Virus record (IMG/VR): IMGVR_UViG_3300020477_001008
Span: 178,647-242,646 of that record
Direction: 5' to 3' (one strand)
DNA: 64,000 nucleotides
Below are positions 5,669 through 41,408 of this stretch, piece after piece (the stretch's first letter is position 1; each line of letters starts with the position of its first letter). Made by a program: the position numbers and the translations under genes. The notes below the pieces were generated by a model. The model searched no databases. It saw only the letters and a program-made list of their open reading frames with translations, and had not been told where the DNA came from.

Positions 5669-5673
5669 TCCTA

Positions 5674-20168: not shown

Positions 20169-21245
20169 ATGTATACAATAGAACAAATAAAAACAATACA
20201 CTTAGAAATTACCCAAAAGTGTCAAGCCGCTTGTCCAATGTGCGACAGAAATCAAAATGGCGGAGACCTTAATCCACATATAAAATTAGACGAATTAACA
20301 TTACAAGACTGTAAACAAATTTTTACACCTTCATTTATATCACAATTAAAGAAAATGTATATGTGTGGTAATTTAGGTGATCCTGTAATTGCTACTGATA
20401 CTTTAGAAGTATTTGAATACTTTAGACAACACAATCCAAACATATGGTTGAATATGCATACAAACGGTGGTGCTAAAAAACCTGAGTGGTGGAAAGATTT
20501 AGCAAAAGTTATTGGCAAAAATGGAGACGTTACTTTTAGTGTTGATGGGTTAGAAGATACAAATCATTTATACAGGCAAAATGTTAATTGGAAACTTGTA
20601 GACCAATCAATGAAAGCATATATTGAAGGTGGTGGAAAAGTTAGATGGGATTATTTAATATTTGATCACAATCAACATCAAGTAGAAGAAGCAGAACAAT
20701 ATGCCAAGTCAATTGGTGTACATAAATTTCAAGCAAAGAAAACAGGTAGATTTATTACTACTACAAGTCAAGCTAAACAATCACACCAAGCAGTAAATCG
20801 TAAAGGTAAAGAAACTCAAGAATTAAAAAAGCCAGATGATAAGTTTGTAAACAAAGCTCTTAAAAAACAAGACTCTTTACTTGACAAATATGGTTCTATG
20901 GATGCATACTACGATAAAGTACCAATTTGGTGCAAAGTAAAAGATGAAGGTAGTTTATATATTAGTGCAGAAGGACTAGCATTACCTTGTTGTTGGACAG
21001 CAGGTAGAATGTACAAATGGTGGCATAAAGATCCTAAAGTAGAACAAATATGGAATCATATAGATGAAGTAGGTGGAAAACAAATGCTTGATGCTAAAAA
21101 CGGATTAGATAAAGTTTTTAATACTGGAATATTTGATTCAATTGAAAAGAGTTGGAATATTGATGGCTGTAATAACGGCAAATTAAAAGTATGTTCTATG
21201 AAATGTGGTAAAGAATTTGATCCATTTGCAGAACAGTTTAACTAA
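20169..21245 (+). CDS. Radical SAM protein, class B (core + C-terminal Cys module)
   Basis: CQAACPMC, GNLGDP, HTNGG, FSVDGLEDTNHLYR; C-terminal C...PCC...CSMKC. Confidence 0.9.
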   Translation: MYTIEQIKTIHLEITQKCQAACPMCDRNQNGGDLNPHIKLDELTLQDCKQIFTPSFISQLKKMYMCGNLGDPVIATDTLEVFEYFRQHNPNIWLNMHTNGGAKKPEWWKDLAKVIGKNGDVTFSVDGLEDTNHLYRQNVNWKLVDQSMKAYIEGGGKVRWDYLIFDHNQHQVEEAEQYAKSIGVHKFQAKKTGRFITTTSQAKQSHQAVNRKGKETQELKKPDDKFVNKALKKQDSLLDKYGSMDAYYDKVPIWCKVKDEGSLYISAEGLALPCCWTAGRMYKWWHKDPKVEQIWNHIDEVGGKQMLDAKNGLDKVFNTGIFDSIEKSWNIDGCNNGKLKVCSMKCGKEFDPFAEQFN

Positions 21246-21272
21246 TTAAATTACCAATAAATATAGTAAAAG

Positions 21273-22745
21273 ATGACTGATAAACCTAAACTACCATCGA
21301 AAACGTTTTGTGCTTTACCTTGGATGCACTTGTCAACAAGGCCTGACGGAAATATGCGAGTATGTTGTACAGCAAACGCAAGTTCTGTTGGTGCTACAAA
21401 TGATAAGGAATTTGGAGGACAAGTGGGACTATTACGTAATGAAGATGGTGTACCGGCAAATTTAAACAATGCAGATTTAATGTCTAGTTGGAATAACAGT
21501 TATATGAAAAATGTGCGTAAGCAGATGTTAACTGGAAAAAGACCACCAAGTTGTATTAAATGTTATAAAGAAGAAGATGCAGGACATATGAGTAAGCGTC
21601 AATGGGAAACTGAATATTGGTTAAACAGATATTCAATGGATGAAATAATTGGCGAAACAACTGAAGATGGTGCTATTCCACCTAAGATTAGATATATTGA
21701 TTTACGTATGGGATCTAAATGTAATTTAAAATGTATTATGTGTAGTCCACACGATAGTTCATTGTGGGTAAAAGACTGGCAGGCTGTTTATCCTAAAATT
21801 AAAAATCCTATATTAAAAGAATCAATGAGCTGGCAGAATAAAGGAAAAGTTCACGGAGCAAATTACAATTGGCATAAAGACAATCCTACATTCTGGGATC
21901 AATTATATGAGCAAATACCTCATATGTATCAGTTATATTTTGCTGGAGGCGAATCTACTATTATTGAAGAGCATTATACTTTATTAGAAGAAGTAATTAG
22001 ACGTGGATATGCTCACAAGATAGAATTACGATACAACTCAAATGGTGTCGAAATGCCTGATAGATTATTTGAGATTTGGAGCAAATTTAAGAGAGTAAGA
22101 TTTCATTATAGTGTTGACTCTATAGAAGAGATGAATAGTTATATACGTTTTCCAGCAGACTGGGATAATACAGTTAAGCAGTTTCATCTATTAGATAATA
22201 CAGATGATAAAGTTGAAGTTACAATTGCCTGTGCAGTACAGGCCTTGAATATACATTATATTCCTGACTTTATAAAATGGAAGCTTGAACAGAATTTTAA
22301 AAAGATTAATGTATGGCCATTTGGTGCTGGAATGATTAATTATCATTTTGTATATTGGCCACCTCAATTAAATGTAAAAGTATTACCACAATGGTTTAAA
22401 GAAAGAGTTAAACAGAAGTACGAGGAGTTTTATCCTTGGCTAGAAGAAAATTGGAAATTAAGTGGTGCTCCAAGTAAAGAAGCATTTTTAAACGCAGACT
22501 ACGGTATCAAAAGATTAAAAGGAATGGTTAAATTTATGATGTCAGAAGATTGGTCTGTGAGAATGCCAGAGTTTAGAGAGTACATAACACAATTTGATAT
22601 ACAGAGAAACACAGACTTTAAAAAAGTATTTCCTGATATGGCAGGCCTTTTAGATGAAACACTTGACAATAGTATTGAGACCAAACTAGGTGATAAAGTG
22701 GATGAAAAAACTGAAAAGGAACTTGCAGATGGCGGAACGATCTAA
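21273..22745 (+). CDS. Radical SAM protein, class A (N-terminal twitch-like module)
   Basis: CALPW...CC...CIKC, then DLRMGSKCNLKCIMC, AGGES, SVDS; ATAAATA 9 nt upstream. Confidence 0.92.
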   Translation: MTDKPKLPSKTFCALPWMHLSTRPDGNMRVCCTANASSVGATNDKEFGGQVGLLRNEDGVPANLNNADLMSSWNNSYMKNVRKQMLTGKRPPSCIKCYKEEDAGHMSKRQWETEYWLNRYSMDEIIGETTEDGAIPPKIRYIDLRMGSKCNLKCIMCSPHDSSLWVKDWQAVYPKIKNPILKESMSWQNKGKVHGANYNWHKDNPTFWDQLYEQIPHMYQLYFAGGESTIIEEHYTLLEEVIRRGYAHKIELRYNSNGVEMPDRLFEIWSKFKRVRFHYSVDSIEEMNSYIRFPADWDNTVKQFHLLDNTDDKVEVTIACAVQALNIHYIPDFIKWKLEQNFKKINVWPFGAGMINYHFVYWPPQLNVKVLPQWFKERVKQKYEEFYPWLEENWKLSGAPSKEAFLNADYGIKRLKGMVKFMMSEDWSVRMPEFREYITQFDIQRNTDFKKVFPDMAGLLDETLDNSIETKLGDKVDEKTEKELADGGTI

Positions 22746-24003
22746 AACATACTGTCCTTTACCTTTTATTCATTCACACGCAGGGTTAAATGGAAAATAT
22801 AAACCTTGTTGTAATTCAGATACATCAGTTCACGGTTACAAATATCATATAGAAAAATTAGGTTATAAAGATTGGTTTTATCATCCAGAAATGGATAAAC
22901 TAAGAAATGATTTATTAAATGGTGTACAAAATCCAATGTGTGATGTTTGTTGGAAACAAGAAGCATTTAGTTCAGATAGTTATAGAACAGTTTATATAAA
23001 AAAATATCAAGATGATAATATAAATCATAAAGATCCAAAAATAACTTATATTGATATGAAGCTATCAAATGAATGTAATTTAGCTTGTACTCATTGTGAT
23101 TATTCTAACTCATCACAAATTTATAAAGATATGTTATCTATAGAAGAGCAAGGTTTGGAGTTACCACCTCAATGGGAAAGAAGTCCTAATTTTGAAAAAA
23201 GATTAGAAGATAAAGATAGAAAAGATATGTATCATAAGCAACCACAAAACGTTGTTGATGAATTAATTGATTTAATGCCAGACCTTAAACACTTAAAAGT
23301 TACAGGTGGAGAGCCTACTATTACAAAAGAATTTTTTAGATTAGTAGATTATGCAGTTGAAAATAACTATGCAAAAAATCTTAATTTGTATATTACTACT
23401 AATGGAACAAGGTTTACTCCTGACTTTATAAAAAAATTACAACACTTTAAAAATTTACATTTAACAGTTAGTTGTGATGGATATGGAGATACTTACGAAT
23501 ATATTAGATATCCATTTACTTGGAAAATGTTTGAGAAAAGATTAAAAGTTGTTGCAGAACATTTAAAGTCAACTAATCATAATATTAGATCATTAAATTT
23601 TAACTGTGTAGCTCAGATGCAAAACATTGAAAACATACCAAAACTTGAAAATTGGATTTATGATTTATTTCAGCAACAAGCATCTCTTTATGTACAGCCA
23701 CATATTAATCCTGTTGATAGTACAAATCATTCTAAACTATTACCAAAGCATATTTTAGAAAAAGCACTAGAAGATATAAGAATATCAAATGCAAAATCAG
23801 GATATGATTTAAAAATGTATACAGATATGTTAGAATGGTTAATTAAAAACTTTAATAGTGATGAATTAAAAATATATAGATCAGTCAAATATCTAAAAAA
23901 TATGAAAAATGCACTTGTTAATCTTGACAAGATAAGAAAACAAGACTATAGAACTAATCTTGAACCATTAACAAGAGAATGGGTGGAGGGTTTAAATGTC
24001 TAA
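22729..24003 (+). CDS. Radical SAM protein, class A
   Basis: CPLPF...PCC...CDVC; CNLACTHC; TGGEP; SCDG; start set at MAERSK. Confidence 0.9.
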   Translation: MAERSKTYCPLPFIHSHAGLNGKYKPCCNSDTSVHGYKYHIEKLGYKDWFYHPEMDKLRNDLLNGVQNPMCDVCWKQEAFSSDSYRTVYIKKYQDDNINHKDPKITYIDMKLSNECNLACTHCDYSNSSQIYKDMLSIEEQGLELPPQWERSPNFEKRLEDKDRKDMYHKQPQNVVDELIDLMPDLKHLKVTGGEPTITKEFFRLVDYAVENNYAKNLNLYITTNGTRFTPDFIKKLQHFKNLHLTVSCDGYGDTYEYIRYPFTWKMFEKRLKVVAEHLKSTNHNIRSLNFNCVAQMQNIENIPKLENWIYDLFQQQASLYVQPHINPVDSTNHSKLLPKHILEKALEDIRISNAKSGYDLKMYTDMLEWLIKNFNSDELKIYRSVKYLKNMKNALVNLDKIRKQDYRTNLEPLTREWVEGLNV

Positions 24004-25246
24004 AACATTTAAGTTTTGTAAGGCACCATTTGGTAGTATATATGTAAGACCAAATGTAAGACCAAATCCACAAGCTGGTAAACAAACTGAGATTAGCTTC
24101 TGCTGTGTGCAGACTGAAAAATATATGTTAAAAGAAAATGAAACAGTTAATGATTTTTGGAAAAGCGACTGGGCAAAAGAACATAGGCAACAGTTTCTTA
24201 ATAAAGAGTGGCCTTCTTCTTGTAGTTATTGTGAATGGAAAGAAAATAACAATATTGAAAGCGATATTGGAACACACCAACAGATTACTATTAAAGAGTA
24301 TAATATTTCTGATGGCAATGAAATGGCTAAACCAAAATATGTTGATTATAGACCAGATAATTTATGCAACCTAATGTGTACAATGTGTGGTCCTAGTAAT
24401 AGTAATTTAATTGAAGATATGTGGCGTGAAATACCTATTAGTCCTGGGTGGCACCACGAAGCAAATGCAGGAATAGATGGTGATGTAACTATTGAAGAAG
24501 AAGAATTAGTAACCAAAGAATTACTTGGTAATCATACAATGCAATTAAAAGTTTTAGGTGGAGAACCTACTATTAATAAAAAAGTTCATTCAGTATTTCA
24601 ATATGCGATTGATAAAGGATATGCACAAAATATAGATTTAAAAATAACAACCAATTTTACTAATGTAAACAAAACTTATGATATGTTTGATAAGTTTAAG
24701 TCTTGCAGGATACAAGCTAGTATTGATGCAACAGGACCAACATATGATTATATTAGAAGACCAGCTAAATGGTCAGCTGTAAAAGAAAAGCTTTTACAAT
24801 TTGCTGATAGATACGAAAATTCTTATCCAAAAATGCAATGGAATTTTAATATTGTTTGGCAATTAGCAAATTGCTTTACTGTTAAAGATTGGTTACCTGA
24901 ATTACTTGATATGTTCTACAATGATCCAAAGCTAAAAAAAATAGCAAAACAAGACGTAGGATTATCATTAATTAATTGTGATGGAACAGGTATAACACTA
25001 GACGCTATACCAGATAGTATGAAACATTATATAATTGATGATTTAGAAGATTTATTAAAAGATTGGAAACATAATCCTTTCGCATTTAAAGATATTGAAA
25101 CATTAATCAAGTATACTGAAAATGCAAAGTTTACCAATTTGCAACATAGAGCATTTAAAAGAAAATTTACATTAATGGATCAATATAAAAAAACAAATAT
25201 GTTTGAATTAAGTCCAAGGTTTAAGGAGTTGTATGACTTTAGATAA
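23996..25246 (+). CDS. Radical SAM protein, class A
   Basis: CKAPF...FCC...CSYC; DNLCNLMCTMC; LGGEP; SIDA. Confidence 0.9.
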   Translation: MSKTFKFCKAPFGSIYVRPNVRPNPQAGKQTEISFCCVQTEKYMLKENETVNDFWKSDWAKEHRQQFLNKEWPSSCSYCEWKENNNIESDIGTHQQITIKEYNISDGNEMAKPKYVDYRPDNLCNLMCTMCGPSNSNLIEDMWREIPISPGWHHEANAGIDGDVTIEEEELVTKELLGNHTMQLKVLGGEPTINKKVHSVFQYAIDKGYAQNIDLKITTNFTNVNKTYDMFDKFKSCRIQASIDATGPTYDYIRRPAKWSAVKEKLLQFADRYENSYPKMQWNFNIVWQLANCFTVKDWLPELLDMFYNDPKLKKIAKQDVGLSLINCDGTGITLDAIPDSMKHYIIDDLEDLLKDWKHNPFAFKDIETLIKYTENAKFTNLQHRAFKRKFTLMDQYKKTNMFELSPRFKELYDFR

Positions 25247-26153
25247 AAAATTGTTTTTAACAAAACACGCCGCTATCTATGATCCTGAATTTCAAGATAG
25301 ATTGTGGAATGCACCTTGGCAAGATTGGTTAAGTAAATCAGGTTATTTTAATGTTAAAGATGAATATATAGAAACTATTGATAAATGGATTTATAATTCT
25401 AATGAAATTAAATTTAATGGGTTAGACAGATTTAAGTATAAAGATTTAATTCACGGAACAACTCAAGCTTTTGATGAAGCATATTACAGATATAAAGAAC
25501 GTAGGTTACGAACTTATAGAGGAGAGTATGCTTATCATAAAAGAGTGCAAGGAGTAAAGAATTTTATTGATACTAAAGAAGGTGATTATATACCAATTGA
25601 AGAAAATGATTGGGTAGTAATAAGTTTACCATTTTGTGGTAATGGTGCTGAGCCACCATTTTTAGAAAAAGTTTTAAATGATTGTGCAAATTTAAATGTA
25701 CCAGTATTAATTGATTGTGCTTGGTTTGGAACACACTATTGGAAAAAAACATTTACTTTAGATAATCCTTGTATTAAAGAAGTATGTTTTAGTATTTCAA
25801 AAGGAATAGGAATGGGTAATATGAGAACTGGTATTCGATATTCTAATTACGATGATCATTTACCTATTAGACAACATAATAATTATAACCATTTGCCTTT
25901 AGGATTATCACAAATTGGTATATGGCAAATGCAAAAGTTTAGTTCTGATTTTATTGGTAACAAGTATAATGAAATGGTAAAAACAGTTTGCGAACAAAAT
26001 AATATTATAATGACTCCAGTTATGCATATTGGGTTACTTGAAAAAGGACATCCTGATTATGAATATTTTTTAACTGATGATGTTTATAGTAAAGTTGGAA
26101 TACGTGAAGCTGTAAAAAAGTATAGAAAGGAATTGCGAAATGAAGAAAGATAA
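25233..26153 (+). CDS. PLP-dependent (aminotransferase fold I-like) protein inside the radical SAM array
   Basis: VISLPF..G, VLIDCAWFG, FSISKG (PLP Lys), RTGIR. Confidence 0.6.
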   Translation: MTLDKKLFLTKHAAIYDPEFQDRLWNAPWQDWLSKSGYFNVKDEYIETIDKWIYNSNEIKFNGLDRFKYKDLIHGTTQAFDEAYYRYKERRLRTYRGEYAYHKRVQGVKNFIDTKEGDYIPIEENDWVVISLPFCGNGAEPPFLEKVLNDCANLNVPVLIDCAWFGTHYWKKTFTLDNPCIKEVCFSISKGIGMGNMRTGIRYSNYDDHLPIRQHNNYNHLPLGLSQIGIWQMQKFSSDFIGNKYNEMVKTVCEQNNIIMTPVMHIGLLEKGHPDYEYFLTDDVYSKVGIREAVKKYRKELRNEER

Positions 26154-27444
26154 TTTTTGCATATTACCTTTTATACATTTAAGTACTAGGACTAACGGTG
26201 CTATGCAATTATGCTGTCACGCAAATAGTAGTACTACAAAAAATTATCGACAGCCAGGACTTAATAGAAAATCAAATGGCGAGTTTGTATATGTGTATAA
26301 AGACAAACCTTCTGATTATTGGAATACTGATTATATGAAAGCTGTTCGTAAAAAACTAATAAATGGCCAAATGCCAAAAGAATGTATGGTATGCTATAAA
26401 GAAGAAGCATCAGGATATAGATCAAAAAGACAATGGGAAAATGATGAGTGGTCTGAAAAAGTAAATTTTGATGATGTATTAGCAAAAGTAAAAGATGATG
26501 GCGAAGCACCTTTTGATATACGTTATGTAGATATGAAATTAGGTAATAAATGTGACCTGGCTTGTTTAATGTGTAATCCAGCAGATAGTTCTTTATGGAT
26601 ACCTGATTATAATAAATTAATTGATTCTAATATATCTGAAAAAGCTAAAGAAGAATTGTTATGGAAAAAAGGCGAAGGAAAATTAAATTGGTATAAAGTA
26701 GATGCAGTTTTTTGGAAAGATATAGAAAGCAAATTAGACAGTATTGAAAATCTATATATAATTGGTGGAGAACCAACAATCAATCCAGAGTTTAAAACTT
26801 TCTTGGAAATGTGCGTAGAATCAGGGCATTCCAGCCGGATAAACCTGCGTTTTAATACGAACGGGTATACTACTACAAAAGAGCTTGATCGCCTTTATAC
26901 GTGCTTTAAAACGTGTTTAATCCACCTTTCTTTAGACGGGTTTGGTGATTATCATAATCTTATACGTTATCCAAGTAATTGGGAAACAATGTTGGAAAAA
27001 TTAGATTATTGGGATAATACAGCAGACAATATACAAGTTACAATTGACTTAACAGCTTCAATATTAAACATTATGCATATACCAGATTTTATTAAGTGGA
27101 AAGTATCACAGAACTTTAAAAAAATTAATACAGATATAAATCAAGGATTTATAGGAATTCATTATTTGCATTCTCCTAATTTTTTAAAAGTAACATCATT
27201 GCCAAAACATATTAAAGAACAAGTAGTAAAACAGTATGAAGATTTATACCAATGGATAAGTGAAAACATTGAAGGTGGAGATAAAAAATTAAAAAAATAT
27301 CAAAAGTTCAAAGCACTTATAGATTTAATGAATGGTAAAGATGAAAGTCATATGTGGCCAACAGTAATAGAGTATTTAGATAAGATGGATAGTATACGAG
27401 GAACAAATTGGAGAAAGGTGTTAAAAGAATATGAAGAAAACTAG
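26140..27444 (+). CDS. Radical SAM protein, class A
   Basis: CILPF...LCC...CMVC; GNKCDLACLMC; IGGEP; SLDG. Confidence 0.92.
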   Translation: MKKDNFCILPFIHLSTRTNGAMQLCCHANSSTTKNYRQPGLNRKSNGEFVYVYKDKPSDYWNTDYMKAVRKKLINGQMPKECMVCYKEEASGYRSKRQWENDEWSEKVNFDDVLAKVKDDGEAPFDIRYVDMKLGNKCDLACLMCNPADSSLWIPDYNKLIDSNISEKAKEELLWKKGEGKLNWYKVDAVFWKDIESKLDSIENLYIIGGEPTINPEFKTFLEMCVESGHSSRINLRFNTNGYTTTKELDRLYTCFKTCLIHLSLDGFGDYHNLIRYPSNWETMLEKLDYWDNTADNIQVTIDLTASILNIMHIPDFIKWKVSQNFKKINTDINQGFIGIHYLHSPNFLKVTSLPKHIKEQVVKQYEDLYQWISENIEGGDKKLKKYQKFKALIDLMNGKDESHMWPTVIEYLDKMDSIRGTNWRKVLKEYEEN

Positions 27445-34363: not shown

Positions 34364-35742
34364 TGTCAGCAAAAGATGTATATTGTCCAATACCGTGGAT
34401 GTTCCAAGCAGTCAGGAACAATGGTGATGTGAGAATATGCTGTCAAGCCAATGTTACTAAAAATCAAGGAGTAGTAAGAAAAGAAGATGGATCATCATAT
34501 AATGCTGGAAAAGATGATATGGATGAAGCCAGAAATGCTGAGCTAATGAAAATTGTTAGAAAAAATATGCTTGAAGGACGTTGGAGTCACGAATGTGGTA
34601 GATGTAAAAAAGAAGAAGAAGCTGGTTTACGAAGTAGAAGACAATATGAACAGGAATGGGGATTTAAATTAGAAGACGCAATACGAATTACTAATGAAGA
34701 TGGTACTATTAAAACTGATGATACACCTTTAGTATATTATGATTTACGTTTTGGTAACTTATGTAATTTAAAATGTAGAATGTGCGGACCAACAGATAGT
34801 CACAGTTGGTATGAAGACTGGCTTGCCTTACACGGAGGTGATGGGTTTCAAGATACTCACGGATATGTAAAATTAAACAAAAATAATAAAGGCAGATTGG
34901 AAACAAACGATTATGATTGGCACAGTAGTGAAAGTTTCTGGAATAATATAGAAAAAAATATTCCTAATATGCAACACGTTTATATGGCAGGTGGAGAACC
35001 TTTAATGATAGAAAGACATTATGACTTTTTACAAAAATGTGTTGATATGGGTCAAGCAGAAAAAATGATAATTGAATATAATACTAATATGACTAATTTG
35101 CAACCTCGTGTTTTAAAATTATGGGAAAAATTTAAAACAGTAAGAGTTGGAGCGTCGATCGATGGAATAGGTAAAGTATTAGAGTATCAAAGGTATCCAG
35201 CTAAATGGAAATCAGTTTTAAAAAATTTACAAGCAGTTGATAACCTAGGACCAAATGTTCAAGGTTGGTTAGCTTGTACAGTTACAACGGTAAATGTATT
35301 TCATATACCAGAATTTATAAAATGGAAAATTATGGAGAGTGGATTTAAAAAGTTTAATACTGGAAAAAAATTACCAGTGTTAACTATACACGTAGCACAC
35401 TCACCAGGCCACGCCTGTATTAAAACTCTACCTCCTGAGTTAAAACAAATAGTTAGAGAAAAGTATGATAATTTTAAAGATTGGCTAATCAATGCAGATT
35501 TAGATGAAAAATATGTACACGCATCTATGAAAATTATTAATAGTATAGTTGACTATATGATGAGTGGCGACAATGGTGGTAAAGGTTGGGGCTGGTTTAA
35601 AATGTATACAAGAACATTAGATTTACGTAGAAAACAAAATATATTAGATATAGCACCTGAGTATGAACCATATTTTAGAGATTTAGATCATATTGATCAG
35701 AACATAAGAGAGAGTGAAAATGCAAGAGTCGGACAAACCTAA
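34363..35742 (+). CDS. Radical SAM protein, class A
   Basis: CPIPW...ICC...CGRC; GNLCNLKCRMC; AGGEP; SIDG. Confidence 0.92.
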   Translation: MSAKDVYCPIPWMFQAVRNNGDVRICCQANVTKNQGVVRKEDGSSYNAGKDDMDEARNAELMKIVRKNMLEGRWSHECGRCKKEEEAGLRSRRQYEQEWGFKLEDAIRITNEDGTIKTDDTPLVYYDLRFGNLCNLKCRMCGPTDSHSWYEDWLALHGGDGFQDTHGYVKLNKNNKGRLETNDYDWHSSESFWNNIEKNIPNMQHVYMAGGEPLMIERHYDFLQKCVDMGQAEKMIIEYNTNMTNLQPRVLKLWEKFKTVRVGASIDGIGKVLEYQRYPAKWKSVLKNLQAVDNLGPNVQGWLACTVTTVNVFHIPEFIKWKIMESGFKKFNTGKKLPVLTIHVAHSPGHACIKTLPPELKQIVREKYDNFKDWLINADLDEKYVHASMKIINSIVDYMMSGDNGGKGWGWFKMYTRTLDLRRKQNILDIAPEYEPYFRDLDHIDQNIRESENARVGQT

Positions 35743-36973
35743 AACTTTTTGCGTTGCCCCATTTTCTCATATGTGGTATCGTAATTCTGGAAACTATTAT
35801 GTCTTTAAACCTTGTTGTGAGGTAAGAGATAATGATGTTTATTATATTGATAAAAATAAAAATCATAAAGATAATGTAATTGCTGAATATTGGAATAGTG
35901 AATGGATTAAAGATATTCGAAAAACTATGTTGGAAAATAAACCGCATAAGATTTGTACAGATTGTTATAAAGTTGAAAAAACAACTGGACGTAAGCACAG
36001 AGATGATTATGCTGGATATTTAAAAGATAATACTATAGAGTTTAATGTTGATACTGGAAATAAATGGAATACACCATTAACACTTGATTATAGACCAAGT
36101 AACTTATGTAATTTAAAATGTAGAATGTGTGGCCCTGGTAGTAGTACTGAGTGGGCTAAAGAAATTGAAAGATATAAAAATTCACATTATCAAAATTTAG
36201 ATAAAATGGAAGATGGCACAGAAGTTATAATGATGTCAACGGACAATGCATTTATGTTTGATAGGGAAACAAATGCAGATGACCAATATAAAAATTTACC
36301 TTTAGACAACATAAGAAGAGCCGCTTTCTTAGGTGGAGAACCTTTATTAAATGAAGAAGTTTTTAATATAATGTCTAATTGGATAAAATTAGGAAAAGAT
36401 AATATTAAGATACAAATAACTACAAATGGTACAAGTTTTACAGATAGATGGTTAAAGTTATTTTCTAAATTCAAAAGAATAAAACTTGTAATTAGTTTAG
36501 ATGGTGTAGGTAATACTTTTGATTATATTAGAACAAATGCAAACTGGGATAAAGTTTTAGAAAATTGTAAAAATTTATCTAAATTAGATCATATTACAAT
36601 ATGTTTTAGTTATTGTATACAGATGTATAATGTTTTTGGTTTAGTTGAGATACTTGAATTTTTAAAGACTTGGAAACAACCAAAAGATGATACTCATATT
36701 TTTGAAGTAGTATTCCAAAATTTTCTTTCAACATCAATGTTAGATACAGAAGATTATAATAAAGTTATTTCAGAGTTACAAGATTATAGAAATAAAAATT
36801 TAGATAGAACTATTGAAGTGGATGAAATATTAGGTATTCTAAAGTATGATAGGAATAGAGTTGTATCAGATGCAGAGAAAAAGTATTTTATAAGTTATAC
36901 AAATAAACTAGACGAAGCTAGGAAAACTAGCCTTATTGATTTAAATCAGGATTTTAAAAAATACTTGATTTAA
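35720..36973 (+). CDS. Radical SAM protein, class A
   Basis: CVAPF...PCC...CTDC; SNLCNLKCRMC; LGGEP; SLDG. Confidence 0.92.
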   Translation: MQESDKPKTFCVAPFSHMWYRNSGNYYVFKPCCEVRDNDVYYIDKNKNHKDNVIAEYWNSEWIKDIRKTMLENKPHKICTDCYKVEKTTGRKHRDDYAGYLKDNTIEFNVDTGNKWNTPLTLDYRPSNLCNLKCRMCGPGSSTEWAKEIERYKNSHYQNLDKMEDGTEVIMMSTDNAFMFDRETNADDQYKNLPLDNIRRAAFLGGEPLLNEEVFNIMSNWIKLGKDNIKIQITTNGTSFTDRWLKLFSKFKRIKLVISLDGVGNTFDYIRTNANWDKVLENCKNLSKLDHITICFSYCIQMYNVFGLVEILEFLKTWKQPKDDTHIFEVVFQNFLSTSMLDTEDYNKVISELQDYRNKNLDRTIEVDEILGILKYDRNRVVSDAEKKYFISYTNKLDEARKTSLIDLNQDFKKYLI

Positions 36974-36993: not shown

Positions 36994-37003
36994 ATAGGTG
37001 CGT

Positions 37004-37078: not shown

Positions 37079-37096
37079 GAATAAAAAGGAATTAAA

Positions 37097-37864
37097 ATGG
37101 CGTTAGTAAAAGAAAAAGTAACAGAAGTTAAACATTGGTCTGATAAGACCTTCACATTTAAAACAACACGTAGTCCGGGCTTTAGATTTAACAATGGTGA
37201 ATTTGTAATGATGGGCTTAGAGCACGAAGGTAAAAAAATTGTTAGGGCTTATAGTGTAGCTTCAGCAAATTATGAAGATTATTTAGAATGGGTATCAATA
37301 AAAATTCAAGATGGACCGTTAACATCTAAATTACAACATATAAAAGTTGGTGATGAAGTTATTATGATGGATAAAGCAACAGGTACACTTGTAATTGATT
37401 ATTTGAAGCCAGGCCGTAATTTATATCTAGTTTCAACAGGTACAGGACTAGCACCATTTTTAGGTATTATAAAAGATTTAGAAACTTATAATAGATTTGA
37501 AAATGTTATTTTAACTCATACAGTACAATATGAAGAAGAATTAGTTTATAGGGAATATTTAGAATCTTTTAATAAGGAAAAAGAATTTATTACACAAGGA
37601 AATTTTCAATACTTTAATACTTTAACAAAAGGTCCTTGGTTAAGACAAGGTAGAATTACAACTTGGATTAAAGGAAACATATTAACATTATGGAAAGCTG
37701 TTGATAAACCAGAGTTTGATCCAACAAAAGATAGAATGATGATATGTGGATCAATGGGCCTGAATGAAGATTTAATGGAATGGTTAAACGGTACAGGCGC
37801 AAAAGAAGGTAACACGTCAACACCAGGGGACTATGTTGTAGAAAAAGCTTTCGTACAAAAATAA
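37097..37864 (+). CDS. fpr: Ferredoxin/flavodoxin-NADP+ reductase
   Basis: FTFKTTR, RAYSVAS, KIQDGPLTSKL, GTLVID, STGTGLAPF, MICGS, PGDYVVEKAF. Confidence 0.93.
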   Translation: MALVKEKVTEVKHWSDKTFTFKTTRSPGFRFNNGEFVMMGLEHEGKKIVRAYSVASANYEDYLEWVSIKIQDGPLTSKLQHIKVGDEVIMMDKATGTLVIDYLKPGRNLYLVSTGTGLAPFLGIIKDLETYNRFENVILTHTVQYEEELVYREYLESFNKEKEFITQGNFQYFNTLTKGPWLRQGRITTWIKGNILTLWKAVDKPEFDPTKDRMMICGSMGLNEDLMEWLNGTGAKEGNTSTPGDYVVEKAFVQK

Positions 37865-37867
37865 TAA

Positions 37868-38653
37868 ATGAAATATTGGCAAAAAAACGTAGATCAAAAA
37901 CCAAATTGGCATATTTGGGGTACTGGACAATCTTTCTGGCCTAAAAATTATTCTAATCAAGTACTGAATTGGTGTGACTCAGACAATAAATCTCGTTTTA
38001 ATTTTAATATGAAAACACATAAAAGTAAATTAGAGAAACTAGGATGGACTAATTCAAACATCACGTATTCTTTTAATAAAGAGAGTTTTCGTAGTGATAG
38101 TTTTAGAAAAAAATGTAGTATACTTTTTAATGGATGTTCACAAACAATGGGGACAGGATTACCTTTAGAAAAAACTTGGACAAATCAAGTTGCTAATTAT
38201 TATAAAGTAAATTATCACAATCTTGCAATAGCTGGTTCTGATTGGAATGCTATAGCACAGAGATCAGTATTTTGGTTGCCTAGACTTAAACCAAAAGTAC
38301 ATATTATCAAAGCACCACCTTCACAAAGATTTACTTGGTGGAAGGACCGAGTACTTATAGGGTCTTCTGATATGTCACGGCAAGAATTATTAAAAAATAA
38401 AGCAGTAGTTGATATAATTGATGATGGTGCAAACTATGAATGGATGAGATATTCAGCTATGAAAGTAATAGAAACTATCTGTAAAGATTTAGATATTAAA
38501 TTACTATATGTTCCTATGGGTAGGATCAGTAAATCTAACTCCGGTGATTTAGCTAGAGATTTAGTGCATTGGGGTTGTATTGAAAATGATAAACTAGCAG
38601 ACTGGGTTATTAAAAAAATGAAAGAGAAAAAATATGAAAATTTTATTAACTGA
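37868..38653 (+). CDS. SGNH/GDSL hydrolase-like protein
   Basis: FNGCSQTMG (block I), NLAIAGSD, DLVHWG (DxxH). Confidence 0.45.
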   Translation: MKYWQKNVDQKPNWHIWGTGQSFWPKNYSNQVLNWCDSDNKSRFNFNMKTHKSKLEKLGWTNSNITYSFNKESFRSDSFRKKCSILFNGCSQTMGTGLPLEKTWTNQVANYYKVNYHNLAIAGSDWNAIAQRSVFWLPRLKPKVHIIKAPPSQRFTWWKDRVLIGSSDMSRQELLKNKAVVDIIDDGANYEWMRYSAMKVIETICKDLDIKLLYVPMGRISKSNSGDLARDLVHWGCIENDKLADWVIKKMKEKKYENFIN

Positions 38654-40220: not shown

Positions 40221-40238
40221 CAAGTAAATATACTTGTT

Positions 40239-41408
40239 ATGGAAATTAATCTTAAAGACAATAAAACCTTTTGTGCTTTTGGCTTTAAAGGAGCAATGAT
40301 TGAAGTTGATGGCAGAGTAAGGCCGTGCTGTCGTTTTAAGATTAAAAAATCACAAAGATTAAAAGTAAATGAAGATAGATCTATTACTGATATTTTTAAT
40401 TCAGAACTTTATAAAGATATAAGAAAAAAAATGTTAGCTGGCGAAAAAGTAGATGGTTGCCAGAGATGTTATAGAGAAGAAGAAGCAGGATATCTTAGTA
40501 TGCGTTTATCTGATATTATCCAATCAACTAATACTGATGTAGAGTTACAATATCTTGAGTTTGAATCAGGAAGACATTGTAATTTAAAATGTAGAAGTTG
40601 CTCAGCTGATGTGTCAACTAAATGGAATGAAGATATAAAAAGACTTCCATCATTACAAGATCCAGATTTTGATTATGAAGCACATTATTATAATGAAGCA
40701 TTAGAAAAATTATCTAAAGATGAGTGTTCTAAATTAAGGTCTATAAAAGTTACAGGTGGTGAGCCATTTTTAAGTAAAACATTTTTAACTTTTATGAATA
40801 ATATGGTTGAATGGGATTATGCAAAAAATGTAACTTTGAAAGTTTATACAAATACTTCTTTTTTACCAAAAAAAAAGTTTCTTGATCAATTATTAAAATT
40901 TCGAAATTTATATTTGTATATGAGTATTGATGATATTAAAGAAAGAAATGATTATTTAAGATCAGGTAGTGAGTGGAAACTAGTAGAACTTGTAGCTCGT
41001 TATTGGATGGAGTTAGCATCAAAAGAGAAAAAAGTACATTTAGTTGTTAGTAATACAGTGAGTATTTTTAATCTGTTAACTTTAAATGAATTTGATGAAT
41101 GGCTAAAACAAAAAGAAAAAGAATATAATATTTTTATAGAATGCAATTATCAGCCTTTGCATTATCCAACAGAATTAGCATACTACAATTGGCCAAGACA
41201 TATTAAAAATCAAATGAAAGAATCTTTAGCTAGATACAAAAACCCATCTAATAAAATTAAAAGGCTTTATGATTTATTAGATTCACATAAGGTGACTACA
41301 ATTAGTGTTAAAAAGCAATTCTTATCCACTACAAATAGTATCGATTATGTTAGAAATGAGAGTTGGAAACAAGTATTTCCTGAACTTTTCAAGCTATTAA
41401 ATGGTTGA
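40239..41408 (+). CDS. Radical SAM protein, class A (13th copy, outside main array)
   Basis: CAFGF...PCC...CQRC; GRHCNLKCRSC; TGGEP; SIDD; GTAAATA-N8-ATG. Confidence 0.9.
   Translation: MEINLKDNKTFCAFGFKGAMIEVDGRVRPCCRFKIKKSQRLKVNEDRSITDIFNSELYKDIRKKMLAGEKVDGCQRCYREEEAGYLSMRLSDIIQSTNTDVELQYLEFESGRHCNLKCRSCSADVSTKWNEDIKRLPSLQDPDFDYEAHYYNEALEKLSKDECSKLRSIKVTGGEPFLSKTFLTFMNNMVEWDYAKNVTLKVYTNTSFLPKKKFLDQLLKFRNLYLYMSIDDIKERNDYLRSGSEWKLVELVARYWMELASKEKKVHLVVSNTVSIFNLLTLNEFDEWLKQKEKEYNIFIECNYQPLHYPTELAYYNWPRHIKNQMKESLARYKNPSNKIKRLYDLLDSHKVTTISVKKQFLSTTNSIDYVRNESWKQVFPELFKLLNG

What the first reader, a model, noticed from the sequence alone, without database searches (positions are those of the whole stretch)
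20169..41408. Array of 13 radical SAM enzymes in two architectures
Seen: 12 CxxxCxxC genes in 20169-36973, mostly overlapping and interrupted only by one PLP gene, plus a 13th at 40239. Nine (class A) have an N-terminal CxxP(W/F)...C(C)...CxxC module before the GGEP core. Four (class B) share GNxG(D/E)-TNG-F.IDG.....H.YR-like motifs with a C...CC/CN...CxxxC module and variable Lys-rich linkers. TAAATA boxes precede 21273 and 40239. Known: SPASM/twitch enzymes use auxiliary clusters for peptide crosslinking, sugar/cyclitol dehydrogenation (BtrN) or cofactor synthesis (MoaA); the auxiliary domain is normally C-terminal. Inference: a diversified late-acting modification factory, plausibly decorating virion proteins/glycans or DNA; the substrate is unknown.
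Basis: partly seen in the sequence, partly recalled or inferred. Interest (0 to 1): 0.9.

Follow-up and report, generated by a model that had tools for sequence, protein, structure and literature searches.

The report
Phage radical SAM enzyme array
A giant marine phage carries 13 intact iron-sulfur "radical SAM" enzyme genes next to its own iron-sulfur assembly genes; they most likely tailor sugars, but no member of these enzyme families has ever been tested.

Summary
Thirteen intact ORFs each carry one CxxxCxxC motif. Twelve sit in a tightly coupled block (20169-36973) and one at 40239.

The nine "class A" genes all pass the curated NCBIfam model NF033640 (N_Twi_rSAM, N-terminal twitch). That architecture is therefore a named but uncharacterised family. 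Three class B genes have a C-terminal four-Cys module. The fourth (32043) is a hybrid: class-B core with an N-terminal module.

Many-rSAM marine phages were already reported (12 genes in a T4-like genome, 2017; rSAM cassettes in pelagimyophage host-recognition clusters, 2020).

New here:
- The array extends a conserved four-gene core: u232 (GT-A glycosyltransferase-like by fold), u280, B1 and A1. This core occurs in 80 viral contigs and, among cellular genomes, almost only in Bdellovibrionota.
- Its neighbours there are GT2 glycosyltransferases, carbamoyl- and acetyltransferases.
- The "PLP gene" is a divergent aminotransferase-like protein, fused to the A3 orthologue in relatives.
- The genes tested are under purifying selection.
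- The window also encodes SufS, SufB/D, Nfu, ferredoxin-NADP reductase and ferredoxin.

Best reading: a combinatorial sugar/glycan-tailoring toolkit. The substrate and the chemistry are inferred, not shown.

The parts
18647..19345 (+). u232: GT-A glycosyltransferase-like protein; first gene of the conserved four-gene core
   Evidence: No Pfam, NCBIfam or PDB sequence hit. The AF2 model has pLDDT 90. The top 50 Foldseek PDB hits are GT-A-fold enzymes, nearly all glycosyltransferases (WrtF, RmlT, GtrB, K4CP, SunS, TarP, ArnC), at E down to 1.8e-4 and TM 0.31-0.47. D58 is nearly invariant and D60 invariant, giving a DxD-like motif. The gene is syntenic with B1 and A1 in most related loci. dN/dS is 0.05-0.13.
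19320..20162 (+). u280: conserved partner with Rossmann/methyltransferase-like motifs; function unverified
   Evidence: No Pfam or NCBIfam hit. The family alignment shows G-G-W-x-G and S-F-D-I-D motifs. The only PDB profile hit is a non-significant match to motifs I-II of thermospermine synthase (E=0.7). The gene is syntenic in viral and Bdellovibrionota loci. dN/dS is 0.14-0.16.
20169..21245 (+). B1: radical SAM enzyme with a C-terminal four-Cys (twitch-like) module; core gene
   Evidence: PF04055 scores 29.7 bits. CxxxCxxC starts at residue 18; C-terminal Cys at 255, 274/275, 342 and 346. Orthologues are found in 131 of 160 related loci. dN/dS is 0.05-0.19.
21273..22745 (+). A1: N-terminal-twitch radical SAM enzyme; the most conserved core gene
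   Evidence: NF033640 scores 429.5 bits against a cutoff of 170. Pfam SPASM covers residues 13-98. Orthologues are 60-70% identical across viruses and Bdellovibrionota. The AF2 model has pLDDT 82.8. dN/dS is 0.07-0.14.
22690..24003 (+). A2: N_Twi radical SAM enzyme (likely start at ATG 22729)
   Evidence: NF033640 scores 270.9 bits and PF04055 56.7 bits. The start codon was inferred.
23996..25246 (+). A3: N_Twi radical SAM enzyme, functionally linked to the PLP-like gene
   Evidence: NF033640 scores 226.8 bits. Its orthologue (43% identity, E=3e-114) is fused C-terminally to the PLP-like domain in L003; ORFs of similar size in L006 and L013 begin with the same PLP-like domain.
25233..26153 (+). 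PLP-like protein: divergent, short fold-type-I aminotransferase-like
   Evidence: No Pfam or NCBIfam hit. Family profile against PDB hits aminotransferases 3if2 (E=0.003) and 3g7q across the D-x-A and S-x-S-K...R motifs. D161, S187 and K190 are invariant. None of the 201 homologues is annotated. dN/dS is 0.17-0.22.
26140..27444 (+). A4: N_Twi radical SAM enzyme
   Evidence: NF033640 scores 370.2 bits. dN/dS is 0.13-0.20.
27431..28831 (+). A5: N_Twi radical SAM enzyme
   Evidence: NF033640 scores 328.9 bits. It is 71% identical to A6, the only recent duplication in the array.
28821..30392 (+). A6: N_Twi radical SAM enzyme, recent paralogue of A5 with a C-terminal insertion
   Evidence: NF033640 scores 316.2 bits, matched in two stretches. 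The insertion is visible in the alignment.
30389..32116 (+). B2: class B radical SAM enzyme with a long Lys/Arg-rich linker, a C-terminal Cys module and an acidic/basic tail
   Evidence: No Pfam hit. NF033640 core region scores only 49 bits. CxxxCxxC starts at residue 55; Cys at 358, 377, 458 and 462. It is 28% identical to B1 over 348 aa. dN/dS is 0.14-0.18.
32043..33152 (+). B3: hybrid architecture, with an N-terminal SPASM/twitch module and a class-B-type core (likely start at ATG 32100)
   Evidence: Pfam SPASM covers residues 36-106 (24.7 bits) and Radical_SAM residues 155-315. The core is 33% identical to B1 and 30% to B2. It is conserved in L003, L006, L013 and L015. dN/dS is 0.31.
33113..34363 (+). 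B4: class B radical SAM enzyme with a C-terminal Cys module (alternative start at 33152)
   Evidence: PF04055 is weak (20 bits). CxxxCxxC starts at residue 31; Cys at 300, 319/320, 397 and 401. See alignment A6.
34363..35742 (+). A7: N_Twi radical SAM enzyme; third most widespread subfamily
   Evidence: NF033640 scores 382.7 bits. The subfamily occurs in 46 related loci, 24 of them cellular, often beside a PLP-like gene.
35714..36973 (+). A8: N_Twi radical SAM enzyme (likely start at ATG 35720); last gene of the coupled block
   Evidence: NF033640 scores 276.8 bits. tRNA-Glu follows at 37004-37078.
37097..37864 (+). Ferredoxin-NADP(+) reductase-like flavoenzyme; candidate start of the electron supply to the radical SAM clusters
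   Evidence: Pfam FAD_binding_6 and NAD_binding_1 match. NF008178 scores 121 bits, below its cutoff.
37868..38653 (+). u261: unknown protein that lies inside rSAM arrays in some relatives
   Evidence: No family or PDB hit. Homologues sit between B2-like and A1 genes in L020-L023.
40239..41408 (+). A9: thirteenth radical SAM enzyme, N_Twi class, detached from the main block
   Evidence: NF033640 scores 292.1 bits. Pfam SPASM covers residues 12-78 (33 bits, E=7.5e-8). TAAATATA lies at 40225-40232.
4463..5668 (+). Cysteine desulfurase-like protein (SufS/NifS type); sulfur donor for Fe-S assembly
   Evidence: Pfam Aminotran_5 scores 411.9 bits.
6210..7634 (+). SufB/SufD-like Fe-S scaffold
   Evidence: Pfam SUFBD_core scores 271 bits.
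17166..18028 (+). NfuA-like carrier (17166-17726) and FeS_assembly_P/PaaD-like protein (17723-18028), just upstream of ClpP and the array
   Evidence: Pfam Nfu_N, NifU and FeS_assembly_P match. The synteny is conserved in relatives.
58927..59232 (+). [2Fe-2S] ferredoxin; possible partner of the reductase at 37097
   Evidence: Pfam Fer2 scores 28 bits.

Best explanation
The array is a phage-borne toolkit of two-cluster (twitch-type) radical SAM enzymes that tailors a carbohydrate: a sugar, oligosaccharide or glycan.

Proposed pathway (inferred):
- A conserved four-gene core builds or primes the substrate. The core is a GT-A glycosyltransferase-like protein (u232), a Rossmann protein (u280), B1 and A1.
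- A variable tail of anciently diverged paralogues then edits it. In this phage the tail holds eleven more rSAM genes and one aminotransferase-like protein.

Proposed chemistry (inferred):
- Each enzyme would cleave SAM at the CxxxCxxC cluster and abstract a hydrogen atom from a sugar C-H.
- It would resolve the radical through its fully Cys-ligated auxiliary cluster, as BtrN does. The outcome would be oxidation to a ketone, epimerisation or deoxygenation.
- The A3 + PLP-like pair would make an amino or deoxy position. The precedents are BtrN/BtrS and DesI/DesII.

Support genes: the phage supplies cluster assembly (SufS, SufB/D, Nfu, FeS_assembly_P), reducing power (ferredoxin-NADP reductase plus ferredoxin) and proteostasis.

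Because the cassette content differs even among close relatives, the product is probably a hypervariable surface structure, on the infected host envelope or on the virion.

Shown: gene identities, architectures, synteny, distribution and purifying selection. Inferred: the carbohydrate substrate, the reaction types and the target.
For: 1. All 13 genes keep the SAM-cluster triad and four auxiliary Cys. Nine pass NF033640.
2. The core u232-u280-B1-A1 recurs in 80 IMG/VR loci. In genomes it is almost only in Bdellovibrionota, including complete chromosomes and an isolate.
3. u232 folds as a GT-A glycosyltransferase.
4. Bacterial loci are rich in glycosylation genes. L162 has five GT2s, an acetyltransferase and five rSAMs. 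L081-L083 have GT2s and PMT_2. A GT2 HMM hits 27 of 81 cellular loci.
5. A NodU/CmcH-type carbamoyltransferase co-occurs in 13 loci, 7 of them viral.
6. The PLP-like protein resembles class I/II aminotransferases and keeps the Lys. In L003 it is fused to the A3 orthologue.
7. In the cultured pelagimyophage Mosig, class-B-like rSAM genes sit beside the tail fibres. They lie with an ArnB/DegT-type sugar aminotransferase, a carbamoyltransferase, methyltransferases, an acetyltransferase and an epimerase. The pelagimyophage host-recognition cluster is reported to vary by rSAM cassettes (PMC7029224).
8. The 710 rSAM ORFs in 160 loci fall into 156 subfamilies at 40% identity. Only A1, B1 and A7 are widespread. 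This pattern is typical of glycan-diversity loci.
9. dN/dS is 0.05-0.31.
10. Fe-S assembly and reductant genes are in the same window.
11. BtrN's auxiliary cluster also has four Cys ligands and is proposed to accept an electron during oxidation of a cyclitol (PMC9012708).
Against: - No member of NF033640, of class B, or of the u232, u280 or PLP-like families has a tested function. Everything about the substrate is guilt by association.
- Canonical GT2 genes are absent from all 79 viral loci and from the window.
- No nucleotide-sugar synthesis genes flank the array.
- u232's fold match has low TM scores (0.31-0.47).
- u280's methyltransferase reading is not significant.
- The PLP assignment rests on E=0.003 and motifs.
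- Foldseek places A1 nearest peptide maturases (SkfB, SuiB) as much as sugar or nucleotide enzymes, at TMq of about 0.3 only. BtrN is not among the top 50.
- In this window the array lies next to Fe-S assembly and Clp genes, not tail fibres.
Confidence: 0.5

Rival explanations
1. The enzymes modify proteins or peptides. Like SPASM/twitch RiPP maturases, they would install crosslinks, epimerise residues or otherwise harden virion proteins (fibres, capsid) or a secreted peptide.
For: The weak secondary NCBIfam hits are mostly to peptide maturases (PapB, CcpM, HxsB/C, YhhB, XyeB, WgkB). The best Foldseek PDB hits for A1 are SkfB and SuiB. Some loci have fibre genes nearby: a Peptidase_S74 fibre in L162, an Mtd_N fibre in L080 and tail fibres in Mosig. 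In L004 the array abuts homologues of 60410 and 61394.
Against: No PqqD/RRE domain appears in any of the 13 genes. There is no room for precursor-peptide genes inside the block, where junctions are 27 nt or less. The secondary hits are 15-60 bits against cutoffs of 265-720. The consistent partners are sugar-type enzymes (GT-A/GT2, carbamoyltransferase, acetyltransferase, aminotransferase-like).
Confidence: 0.15
2. The enzymes modify a lipid of the envelope: lipid A, other membrane lipids or a polyprenyl carrier. This would remodel the host outer membrane during infection.
For: There are weak hits to the tetraether lipid synthase Tes for A4-A6 and A9 (E 5e-6 to 4e-3). Asp/Asn beta-hydroxylase-family genes recur near arrays: the window gene at 9223, and loci L003, L006, L037, L062, L125, L128 and L137. 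I recall that LpxO, the lipid A hydroxylase, belongs to this family. PAP2 phosphatase, a porin, MotA/ExbB and SbmA are in the window. PMT_2/ArnT-like membrane transferases occur in bacterial loci. A PagP-annotated gene lies near the rSAM cluster of Vibrio phage K566.
Against: The Tes hits are far below cutoff (15-25 bits against 450). No acyl, isoprenoid or lipid A biosynthesis genes are in the block. The GT-A, carbamoyltransferase and aminotransferase partners fit sugars better, although a glycolipid would satisfy both readings.
Confidence: 0.1
3. The enzymes hypermodify phage DNA or nucleotides, as an anti-restriction measure.
For: The context is a phage. An NT5C-type deoxynucleotidase (38634) and a DNA ligase (42073) lie next to the array. 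ThyX is near arrays in 10 viral loci. A GT-A-like enzyme could in principle glycosylate bases.
Against: The same core is chromosomal in Bdellovibrionota, among GT2, PMT_2 and acetyltransferase genes. No base-modification enzymes (hydroxymethylases, dNMP kinases, aGPT-Pplase-like proteins) are in the block. The ligase and u215 are a conserved anchor flanking a variable slot rather than part of the cassette.
Confidence: 0.07
4. Most copies are redundant or decaying passengers: a hitch-hiking, recently amplified gene family without distinct functions.
For: Copy number varies greatly among relatives, from 2-3 to 12. A3, A8 and A9 have no orthologue at 40% identity or more in the sampled loci.
Against: All 13 genes keep every cluster ligand. 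Paralogues are only 20-37% identical, so they are ancient, with the single exception of A5/A6. dN/dS is 0.05-0.31 for the ten genes that could be tested. The genes are translationally coupled.
Confidence: 0.05

Closest known systems
NCBIfam NF033640, N_Twi_rSAM (twitch domain-containing radical SAM protein)
   Same: All nine class A genes match the model end to end at 227-430 bits, against a cutoff of 170. They share the N-terminal four-Cys twitch, the CxxxCxxC core, GGE and the conserved C-terminal helical region.
   Different: The family has no assigned reaction, so membership says nothing about function. Nine deeply diverged members (23-37% identity, apart from the 71% A5/A6 pair) sit in one operon-like block, and one related gene (B3) joins an N-terminal module to a different core.
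BtrN (2-deoxy-scyllo-inosamine dehydrogenase, butirosin pathway) with the aminotransferase BtrS
   Same: Both have a single auxiliary [4Fe-4S] cluster with four Cys ligands (PMC9012708). As I recall it, the BtrN ligand spacing is C-x18-C-x43-C-x2-C; class A has C-x17-20-C ... C-x2-C. The logic of a radical SAM oxidation followed by PLP transamination matches the A3 + PLP-like fusion.
   Different: BtrN's twitch is C-terminal, whereas class A's is N-terminal. No sequence hit to BtrN was found in PDB searches, and it is not in the Foldseek top 50. The substrate here is unknown.
Many-rSAM marine T4-like phage genomes (TARA_ERS488813_N000010; pelagimyophage host-recognition-cluster cassettes; Mosig EXVC030M)
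   Same: All are AT-rich marine myophage-type genomes with many radical SAM genes plus Fe-S assembly genes. The 2017 genome has 12 rSAM genes, an A-type carrier (ATC) gene and paaD (PMC5332604). rSAM cassettes vary between close pelagimyophages (PMC7029224). The window also has two pelagimyophage core markers, ribosomal protein S21 and an Asp/Asn hydroxylase.
   Different: This genome is larger: the contig is 242.6 kb, and identical DnaK and SbmA proteins occur on contigs up to 311 kb. It has a fuller set of support genes (SufS, SufB/D, Nfu, FNR, ferredoxin, SOD). Its array lies beside Clp and Fe-S genes rather than tail fibres. The published work counted the genes but did not classify them or propose a substrate.
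DesI/DesII (TDP-desosamine pathway)
   Same: A PLP aminotransferase paired with a radical SAM enzyme on a sugar, achieving deoxygenation by transamination and then radical deamination (from my own knowledge). DesII appears among the Foldseek hits (8hzv, E=7e-3).
   Different: As far as I recall, DesII has no auxiliary cluster. Similarity is at fold level only. No NDP-sugar genes flank the array here.
SPASM/twitch peptide maturases (SkfB, SuiB, anSME)
   Same: These are the best structural neighbours of the A1 model (E 3e-5 to 5e-4). They have the same superfamily core plus auxiliary clusters.
   Different: TM normalised to the query is only about 0.3. Their auxiliary domains are C-terminal. 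Here there is no RRE domain and no precursor peptide, and all curated maturase models score far below their cutoffs.

Membership tests
Radical SAM superfamily (PF04055) | CxxxCxxC motif for the SAM-binding [4Fe-4S] cluster, with a match to the core model | tested here: met
   There is one motif in each of the 13 genes. PF04055 matches 12 of 13 at E<=1e-3, six above the gathering score. Gene 30389 is recognised only through its alignment to class B and a 49-bit NF033640 core match.
Radical SAM superfamily (PF04055) | Reductive cleavage of SAM to a 5'-deoxyadenosyl radical | not testable with these tools
   This needs anaerobic reconstitution and a SAM cleavage assay.
NF033640 N_Twi_rSAM | Whole-protein score above the curated cutoff of 170 bits | tested here: met
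   A1 429.5, A2 270.9, A3 226.8, A4 370.2, A5 328.9, A6 316.2, A7 382.7, A8 276.8 and A9 292.1 bits. Class B genes do not qualify: B1 and B2 score 49 bits over the core only, and B3 and B4 have no hit.
NF033640 N_Twi_rSAM | Twitch-type Cys module N-terminal to the radical SAM core | tested here: met
   Four invariant Cys lie upstream of CxxxCxxC in all nine genes. Pfam SPASM matches the N-terminus above its gathering score in A1 and A9, and below it in A5.
SPASM/twitch subfamily (PF13186; one or two auxiliary clusters) | A domain that binds auxiliary Fe-S cluster(s), normally C-terminal to the core | tested here: inconclusive
   The N-terminal modules of A1, A9 and B3 pass PF13186 (22.4, 33.0 and 24.7 bits against 21.5). 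The C-terminal modules of B1, B2 and B4 get no PF13186 hit and are called twitch-like only from the C-x18-C(C)-x~66-80-C-x3-C pattern. hhalign between the class A N-modules and the class B C-modules gives 16% probability. Cluster binding itself is not testable here.
BtrN-type radical SAM dehydrogenases | Detectable homology to BtrN, and a C-terminal twitch | tested here: not met
   There is no PDB sequence hit. BtrN is absent from the Foldseek top 50. The twitch is N-terminal in class A. Only the four-Cys ligation pattern is shared.
MoaA (GTP 3',8-cyclase), TIGR02666 | Score above the curated cutoff of 284 bits | tested here: not met
   The best score is 38 bits (A2), and all others are lower. 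A housekeeping MoaA role is excluded.
Anaerobic sulfatase maturase / tungsten-cofactor maturase (TIGR03942, TIGR04317) | Score above the curated cutoffs of 349 and 380 bits | tested here: not met
   The best scores are 27 bits (A2, TIGR03942) and 63 bits (B3, TIGR04317). The JGI label 'AslB' on homologues is a generic COG name.
Fold-type I PLP aminotransferases (PF00155 and relatives), for 25233-26153 | Match to a curated aminotransferase model | tested here: not met
   There is no Pfam or NCBIfam hit, even at E<=0.01, and none among 201 homologues.
Fold-type I PLP aminotransferases (PF00155 and relatives), for 25233-26153 | Conserved Asp (pyridine N), Schiff-base Lys in S-x-S-K, and a following Gly/Arg | tested here: met
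   D161, S187, K190 and G200 are invariant in 12 homologues. They align to the equivalent motifs of aminotransferases 3if2 and 3g7q (E=0.003 and 0.055).
GT-A glycosyltransferases (GT2-like), for u232 | GT-A Rossmann-like fold with a DxD motif | tested here: met
   The AF2 model has pLDDT 90 and pTM 0.84. The top 50 Foldseek PDB hits are GT-A-fold enzymes, nearly all glycosyltransferases, at probability 0.84-1.0 but TM only 0.31-0.47. D58-x-D60 is conserved. There is no sequence-level match to Pfam GT2 or to a bona fide GT2 of the same length by hhalign.

The most novel reading that the evidence does not exclude
Tailed phages and predatory Bdellovibrionota share a previously uncharacterised glycan-editing system. 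A conserved core (a GT-A-like enzyme, a Rossmann protein and two twitch radical SAM enzymes) makes a sugar scaffold. Interchangeable radical SAM cassettes then rewrite it after assembly by oxidation, epimerisation, amination or deoxygenation. There are at least 156 subfamilies of these cassettes in the 160 loci sampled, and most have a circularly permuted, N-terminal twitch. The result would be hypervariable surface structures in a recognition arms race. The hybrid B3 would be a living intermediate of the domain permutation. The phage would pay for 26 [4Fe-4S] clusters per enzyme set with its own Suf/Nfu/FNR/ferredoxin module in an iron-poor ocean.
Probability: 0.25. Interest if true: 0.85.

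Novelty: new member of a known kind. Interest (0 to 1): 0.6.

Why it matters
Radical SAM enzymes with auxiliary clusters carry out chemically difficult reactions. Here a whole curated family (NF033640) and its class B partners have no known reaction. A1 alone has more than 2,700 homologues, the closest listed being 65-96% identical, and the families dominate variable regions of abundant marine phages.

If the enzymes edit sugars, this would be a new route to glycan diversity. It would also be a source of new biocatalysts and a clue to how large marine phages and Bdellovibrionota shape recognition surfaces.

One enzyme set needs about 104 iron atoms (13 enzymes, two [4Fe-4S] clusters each). Together with phage-encoded Fe-S assembly and reductant genes, that makes the array relevant to iron economy during infection in oligotrophic seas.

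Practical value of this analysis:
- It reduces a 13-gene puzzle to a testable four-gene core.
- It points to a cultured organism, Bdellovibrio sp. HCB2-146, that carries the A1, B1 and u280 orthologues of that core among GT2 and further rSAM genes (its u232 homologue was not detected).
- It points to cultured phages with related genes: Mosig (class B-like), and KVP40 and Vibrio phages K566/K567 (class A-like).

Tried and rejected
- Megablast of the whole region against 50,697 phage records found no match.
- tblastn of A1, B1 and A7 against cultured phages found only distant hits: RsoM2USA, Vibrio K566/K567, Campylobacter CP220/F379 and Pelagibacter Mosig. A7 against plasmids found nothing.
- Sequence searches of A1, B1, u232, u280, u261 and the PLP-like protein against PDB found nothing significant. 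The one exception was the PLP-like family profile.
- Pfam on fusion proteins that contain u232 or u280 domains was uninformative.
- hhalign of the u232 family against a same-sized GT2 from Bdellovibrio showed no relationship. Only the predicted fold revealed GT-A.
- The first genome-collection scan, with A1 peptide patterns, found nothing. The alignment-based scan worked.
- Sigma-70 promoter and terminator scans were at chance level. The full T4 late consensus TATAAATA is depleted (2 copies against 16 expected) and is absent upstream of the array genes.
- The homology test between N-terminal and C-terminal Cys modules was only suggestive, at 16-51% probability. The circular-permutation idea stays a hypothesis.
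- Foldseek of A1 against PDB does not separate sugar, nucleotide and peptide enzymes.
- Housekeeping roles (MoaA, AslB/anSME, NirJ, PqqE and others) were rejected, because all curated equivalog scores are far below their cutoffs.
- Reading through stops was not needed, since none of the 13 ORFs is interrupted.
- I could not measure Cys-Cys distances in the models, because coordinates are not exposed to scripts.

Full report
**The locus**

The window is 30% G+C. All genes are on the + strand and there are seven tRNAs. It is identical to part of IMG/VR contig IMGVR_UViG_3300020477_001008, which is 242,646 bp. Identical DnaK and SbmA proteins occur on contigs up to 311 kb.

The DNA ligase is of the phage ATP-dependent type, with matches in 1,516 phage records. 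A 617-aa ORF at 61394 shares a carbohydrate-binding-type domain with Pelagibacter podophages. Ribosomal protein S21 and an Asp/Asn beta-hydroxylase-family protein are present; both are described as core genes of pelagimyophages (PMC7029224). I therefore treat the source as a jumbo marine myophage-like virus. A SAR11-like AT-rich host is likely but is only inferred.

**Observation check**

Thirteen intact ORFs each carry exactly one CxxxCxxC motif. Twelve lie in 20169-36973 and one at 40239-41408. Pfam Radical_SAM matches 12 of them. Gene 30389 is recognised only through its alignment with the other class B genes and a weak NCBIfam core match.

From ClpP (18060) to the end of A8 (36973), all 16 junctions are overlaps or gaps of 27 nt or less. 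This is one translationally coupled block.

**Architectures**

- *Class A.* The nine class A genes all pass the curated NCBIfam model NF033640 'N_Twi_rSAM, twitch domain-containing radical SAM protein' at 227-430 bits, against a cutoff of 170. Across the nine, the invariant residues are four N-terminal Cys, the SAM-cluster triad, GGE and a handful of others. Pfam's SPASM model matches the N-terminus above threshold in A1 and A9.
But it is a named family, not a new architecture.
- *Class B.* Genes B1, B2 and B4 have the core first, then a Lys/Arg-rich linker, then a C-x18-C(C)-x66-80-C-x3-C module.
- *B3, the hybrid.* The fourth 'class B' gene (32043) has a class-B-type core, 33% identical to B1. 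Its Cys module is N-terminal (Pfam SPASM 24.7 bits) and nothing follows the core. It is conserved in four relatives, with dN/dS 0.31.
- *Permutation idea.* Profile comparisons among the three kinds of Cys module align the same hairpin-CC region, but at only 16-51% probability. The idea that the N-terminal twitch arose by permutation, with B3 as an intermediate, is attractive but unproven.

**The 'PLP gene'**

Gene 25233-26153 has no Pfam or NCBIfam hit, and none of its 201 homologues is annotated. A profile of the family hits class I/II aminotransferases (3if2, E=0.003; 3g7q, E=0.055) exactly across the D-x-A and S-x-S-K...R motifs. The Asp, Ser and Lys are invariant.

In L003 the domain is fused N-terminally to the orthologue of A3 (43% identity, E=3e-114). 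ORFs of similar size in L006 and L013 begin with the same domain. I read this as a Rosetta-stone link between one rSAM enzyme and a PLP-type enzyme.

**Are the copies functional?**

Paralogues are 19-37% identical to each other, except A5/A6 at 71%. The array is therefore an assembly of old lineages, not a recent amplification. All cluster ligands are intact. dN/dS against relatives is 0.05-0.31 for u232, u280, B1, A1, A2, PLP-like, A4, A5/A6, B2 and B3.

**Distribution**

A1 has more than 2,700 homologues in the large protein collection, and the closest listed are 65-96% identical to it. Eighty IMG/VR loci carry it, nearly always preceded by the same three genes: u232, u280 and B1. After A1 the content varies. 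Close relatives of this phage have 2-3 further rSAM genes (L004, L005, L007, L016) or 7-8 (L003, L013, L015), between the conserved anchors ClpP and u215/ligase.

Within 10 kb either side of A1, 23 of 160 loci have eight or more rSAM genes, and the maximum is 12. The 710 rSAM ORFs fall into 156 subfamilies at 40% identity. Only A1, B1 and A7 are widespread.

Among 185,579 species genomes, A1 orthologues (60-68% identical) are found almost only in Bdellovibrionota. These include complete chromosomes and the isolate Bdellovibrio sp. HCB2-146. A few 'MAG' hits have unidirectional viral-type arrays and look like mis-binned phage contigs (Rickettsiales MED657, Gammaproteobacteria MED685, Chloroflexota NAT137, Acidimicrobiaceae NP20, and a Euryarchaeota record).

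**Functional context**

- In Bdellovibrionota the core sits among GT2 glycosyltransferases, PMT_2, acetyltransferases and further rSAM genes. A GT2 HMM hits 27 of 81 cellular loci but none of the 79 viral loci.
- u232 has no sequence-level annotation, in a family of more than 5,500 proteins. It gives a confident AF2 model (pLDDT 90) whose 50 best PDB matches are GT-A-fold enzymes, nearly all glycosyltransferases.
- A NodU/CmcH-type carbamoyltransferase co-occurs in 13 loci.
- In the cultured pelagimyophage Mosig, class-B-like rSAM genes lie beside the tail fibres. The same region is annotated with an ArnB/DegT-type sugar aminotransferase, a carbamoyltransferase, methyltransferases, an acetyltransferase, an epimerase and two Asp/Arg-hydroxylase-domain proteins.
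- Published work already noted that the pelagimyophage host-recognition cluster differs between close relatives by rSAM cassettes. It also noted that a 183-kb T4-like marine genome carries 12 rSAM genes plus Fe-S assembly genes.

**Support genes in the window**

- Fe-S assembly: SufS-like desulfurase, SufB/D, an NfuA-like carrier and FeS_assembly_P.
- Reducing power and oxidative protection: a ferredoxin-NADP reductase-like enzyme directly after the array, a [2Fe-2S] ferredoxin and SOD.
- Proteostasis: DnaK, HSP20, ClpX, ClpS and ClpP.

Thirteen enzymes with two [4Fe-4S] clusters each need 26 clusters per set. The co-location makes sense as a supply chain, but that is an inference.

**Structure of class A**

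The A1 model (pLDDT 82.8) has no close solved relative. The best PDB hits are generic rSAM enzymes (SkfB, SuiB, viperin, anSME, MoaA, DesII, BlsE), with TM normalised to the query of about 0.3.

Against predicted viral structures it matches about 20 'uncultured Caudovirales' proteins over their full length (TM 0.6-0.85). It also matches the 'MoaA/NifB/PqqE family' proteins of vibriophages KVP40 and phi-pp2. The fold is therefore common in tailed phages and has never been characterised.

**Mechanism proposed**

The four-Cys, fully ligated auxiliary cluster is the BtrN situation rather than the MoaA one (PMC9012708). It points to a redox role for the cluster: accepting or returning an electron after H-atom abstraction. 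It does not point to substrate binding at an open iron site.

Combined with the carbohydrate-type partners and the rSAM-aminotransferase fusion, the most economical reading is as follows. The enzymes oxidise, epimerise, aminate or deoxygenate positions of a sugar or glycan. The u232/u280/B1/A1 core starts that substrate and the variable cassettes diversify it. The precedents (BtrN/BtrS; DesI/DesII) are from my own knowledge and the cited review.

Whether the product decorates the host envelope, the virion or a free metabolite cannot be told from sequence. I give the carbohydrate reading 0.5. The rivals are protein/peptide modification (0.15), lipid modification (0.1), DNA/nucleotide modification (0.07) and largely redundant copies (0.05).

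**Promoter note**

TAAATATA occurs seven times in the window, against 16 expected. All four + strand copies lie in short intergenic spacers 6-17 nt upstream of start codons, at 5740, 21273, 40239 and a small ORF at 44835. The full T4 late consensus TATAAATA occurs only twice, both times intergenic. Timing of expression remains untested.

**Verdict**

The finding is real and correctly described apart from the B3 architecture. It is a large new member of an already noticed kind: multi-rSAM cassettes of marine myophages, built from a curated but uncharacterised N-terminal-twitch family.

Its interest lies in three things. The enzymology is completely unknown. The core is shared with Bdellovibrionota. 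And there is now a concrete, testable hypothesis with cultured handles.

Noticed in passing
window 4463-7634, 17166-18028, 37097-37864, 56504-57142, 58927-59232: The window holds a near-complete Fe-S support set: SufS-like cysteine desulfurase, SufB/D, an NfuA-like carrier, FeS_assembly_P (PaaD/SufT-like), a ferredoxin-NADP reductase-like enzyme, Fe/Mn superoxide dismutase and a [2Fe-2S] ferredoxin. It plausibly supplies and protects the 26 clusters of the array.
   Followed up: partly
window 1615-2907, 11063-13492, 15838-16140, 18060-18647: The phage carries a full proteostasis kit: ClpX, HSP20, DnaK (919 bits to Hsp70), ClpS and ClpP. ClpP is the first gene of the coupled block that runs into the array.
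   Followed up: no
window 2904-3807, 5740-6210, and tRNAs at 4289-4444, 37004-37078, 58751-58913, 60241-60316, 63628-63702: The window holds translation genes: IF3, ribosomal protein S21, ribosomal protein L7/L12 and seven tRNAs. tRNA-Glu sits directly after the last gene of the array.
   Followed up: no
window 9962-10891, 14098-14700, 16140-17108, 50858-51556: The window holds envelope-related genes: a porin-like protein, a MotA/ExbB-type proton channel, an SbmA/BacA-like transporter (453 bits) and a PAP2 phosphatase. SbmA and ExbB hint at uptake functions (peptides, or iron complexes?) during infection.
   Followed up: no
window 5716-5723, 21258-21265, 40225-40232, 44821-44828 (also 10992-10999 and 44819-44826): The 8-mer TAAATATA is under-represented overall (7 copies against 16 expected). 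All four + strand copies are intergenic and lie 6-17 nt upstream of start codons. The T4 late consensus TATAAATA occurs only twice, both times intergenic. This is a candidate promoter element for this phage group.
   Followed up: partly
L003:12716-14863 (also L006:8134-10251 and L013:12679-14790): In L003 the PLP-like protein and the A3-type radical SAM enzyme are one 715-aa polypeptide. ORFs of similar size in L006 and L013 begin with the same PLP-like domain. In the window they are two genes in the opposite order, overlapping by 14 nt.
   Followed up: yes
L084-L162 (genome contigs), e.g. L125/L162 = Bdellovibrio sp. HCB2-146 NZ_JBLEQP010000001.1:1879803-1901179: Among cellular genomes, the A1/B1/u232/u280 core is almost confined to Bdellovibrionota, the predatory bacteria. 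A1 there is 60-68% identical to the phage copies. In the isolate it lies 6 kb from a 1,959-aa Peptidase_S74 fibre-like protein. The direction of transfer is unresolved.
   Followed up: partly
L134 (NZHE01000012.1), L136 (NZGL01000008.1), L141 (PAAV01000055.1), L143 (PBYV01000081.1), and protein P0241 (MBR20029.1): Public MAGs labelled Rickettsiales, Gammaproteobacteria, Chloroflexota, Acidimicrobiaceae and Euryarchaeota carry unidirectional viral-type rSAM arrays, up to 12 rSAM genes in 21 kb. They are probably mis-binned phage contigs.
   Followed up: no
window 28821-30392 versus 27431-28831: A5 and A6 are the only recent duplicates (71% identity). A6 has an extended N-terminus and an insertion of roughly 50-60 residues in the C-terminal helical region.
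   Followed up: no
window 60410-63247; L004 downstream of its short array: In the 328-kb relative L004, homologues of 60410 (74%) and of the 617-aa protein 61394 (79%) directly follow a three-rSAM array. Protein 61394 shares a carbohydrate-binding-type domain with Pelagibacter podophage proteins. It is possibly a host-recognition protein.
   Followed up: no
window 7860-9813, 44238-44798, 47514-50209: Other auxiliary genes are present: aldehyde dehydrogenase, an Asp/Asn beta-hydroxylase-family protein (whose homologues recur near arrays in other loci), a 2OG-Fe(II) oxygenase, UvdE UV endonuclease and a cytidylyltransferase-NT5C fusion.
   Followed up: no
u232 family (P0121-P0240): Most database homologues of the 232-aa u232 are 340-460 aa long and score about 400 bits against the single-domain profile. 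This suggests tandem-domain or extended versions. In some loci u232 and u280 domains are embedded in 500-1,200-aa proteins.
   Followed up: no
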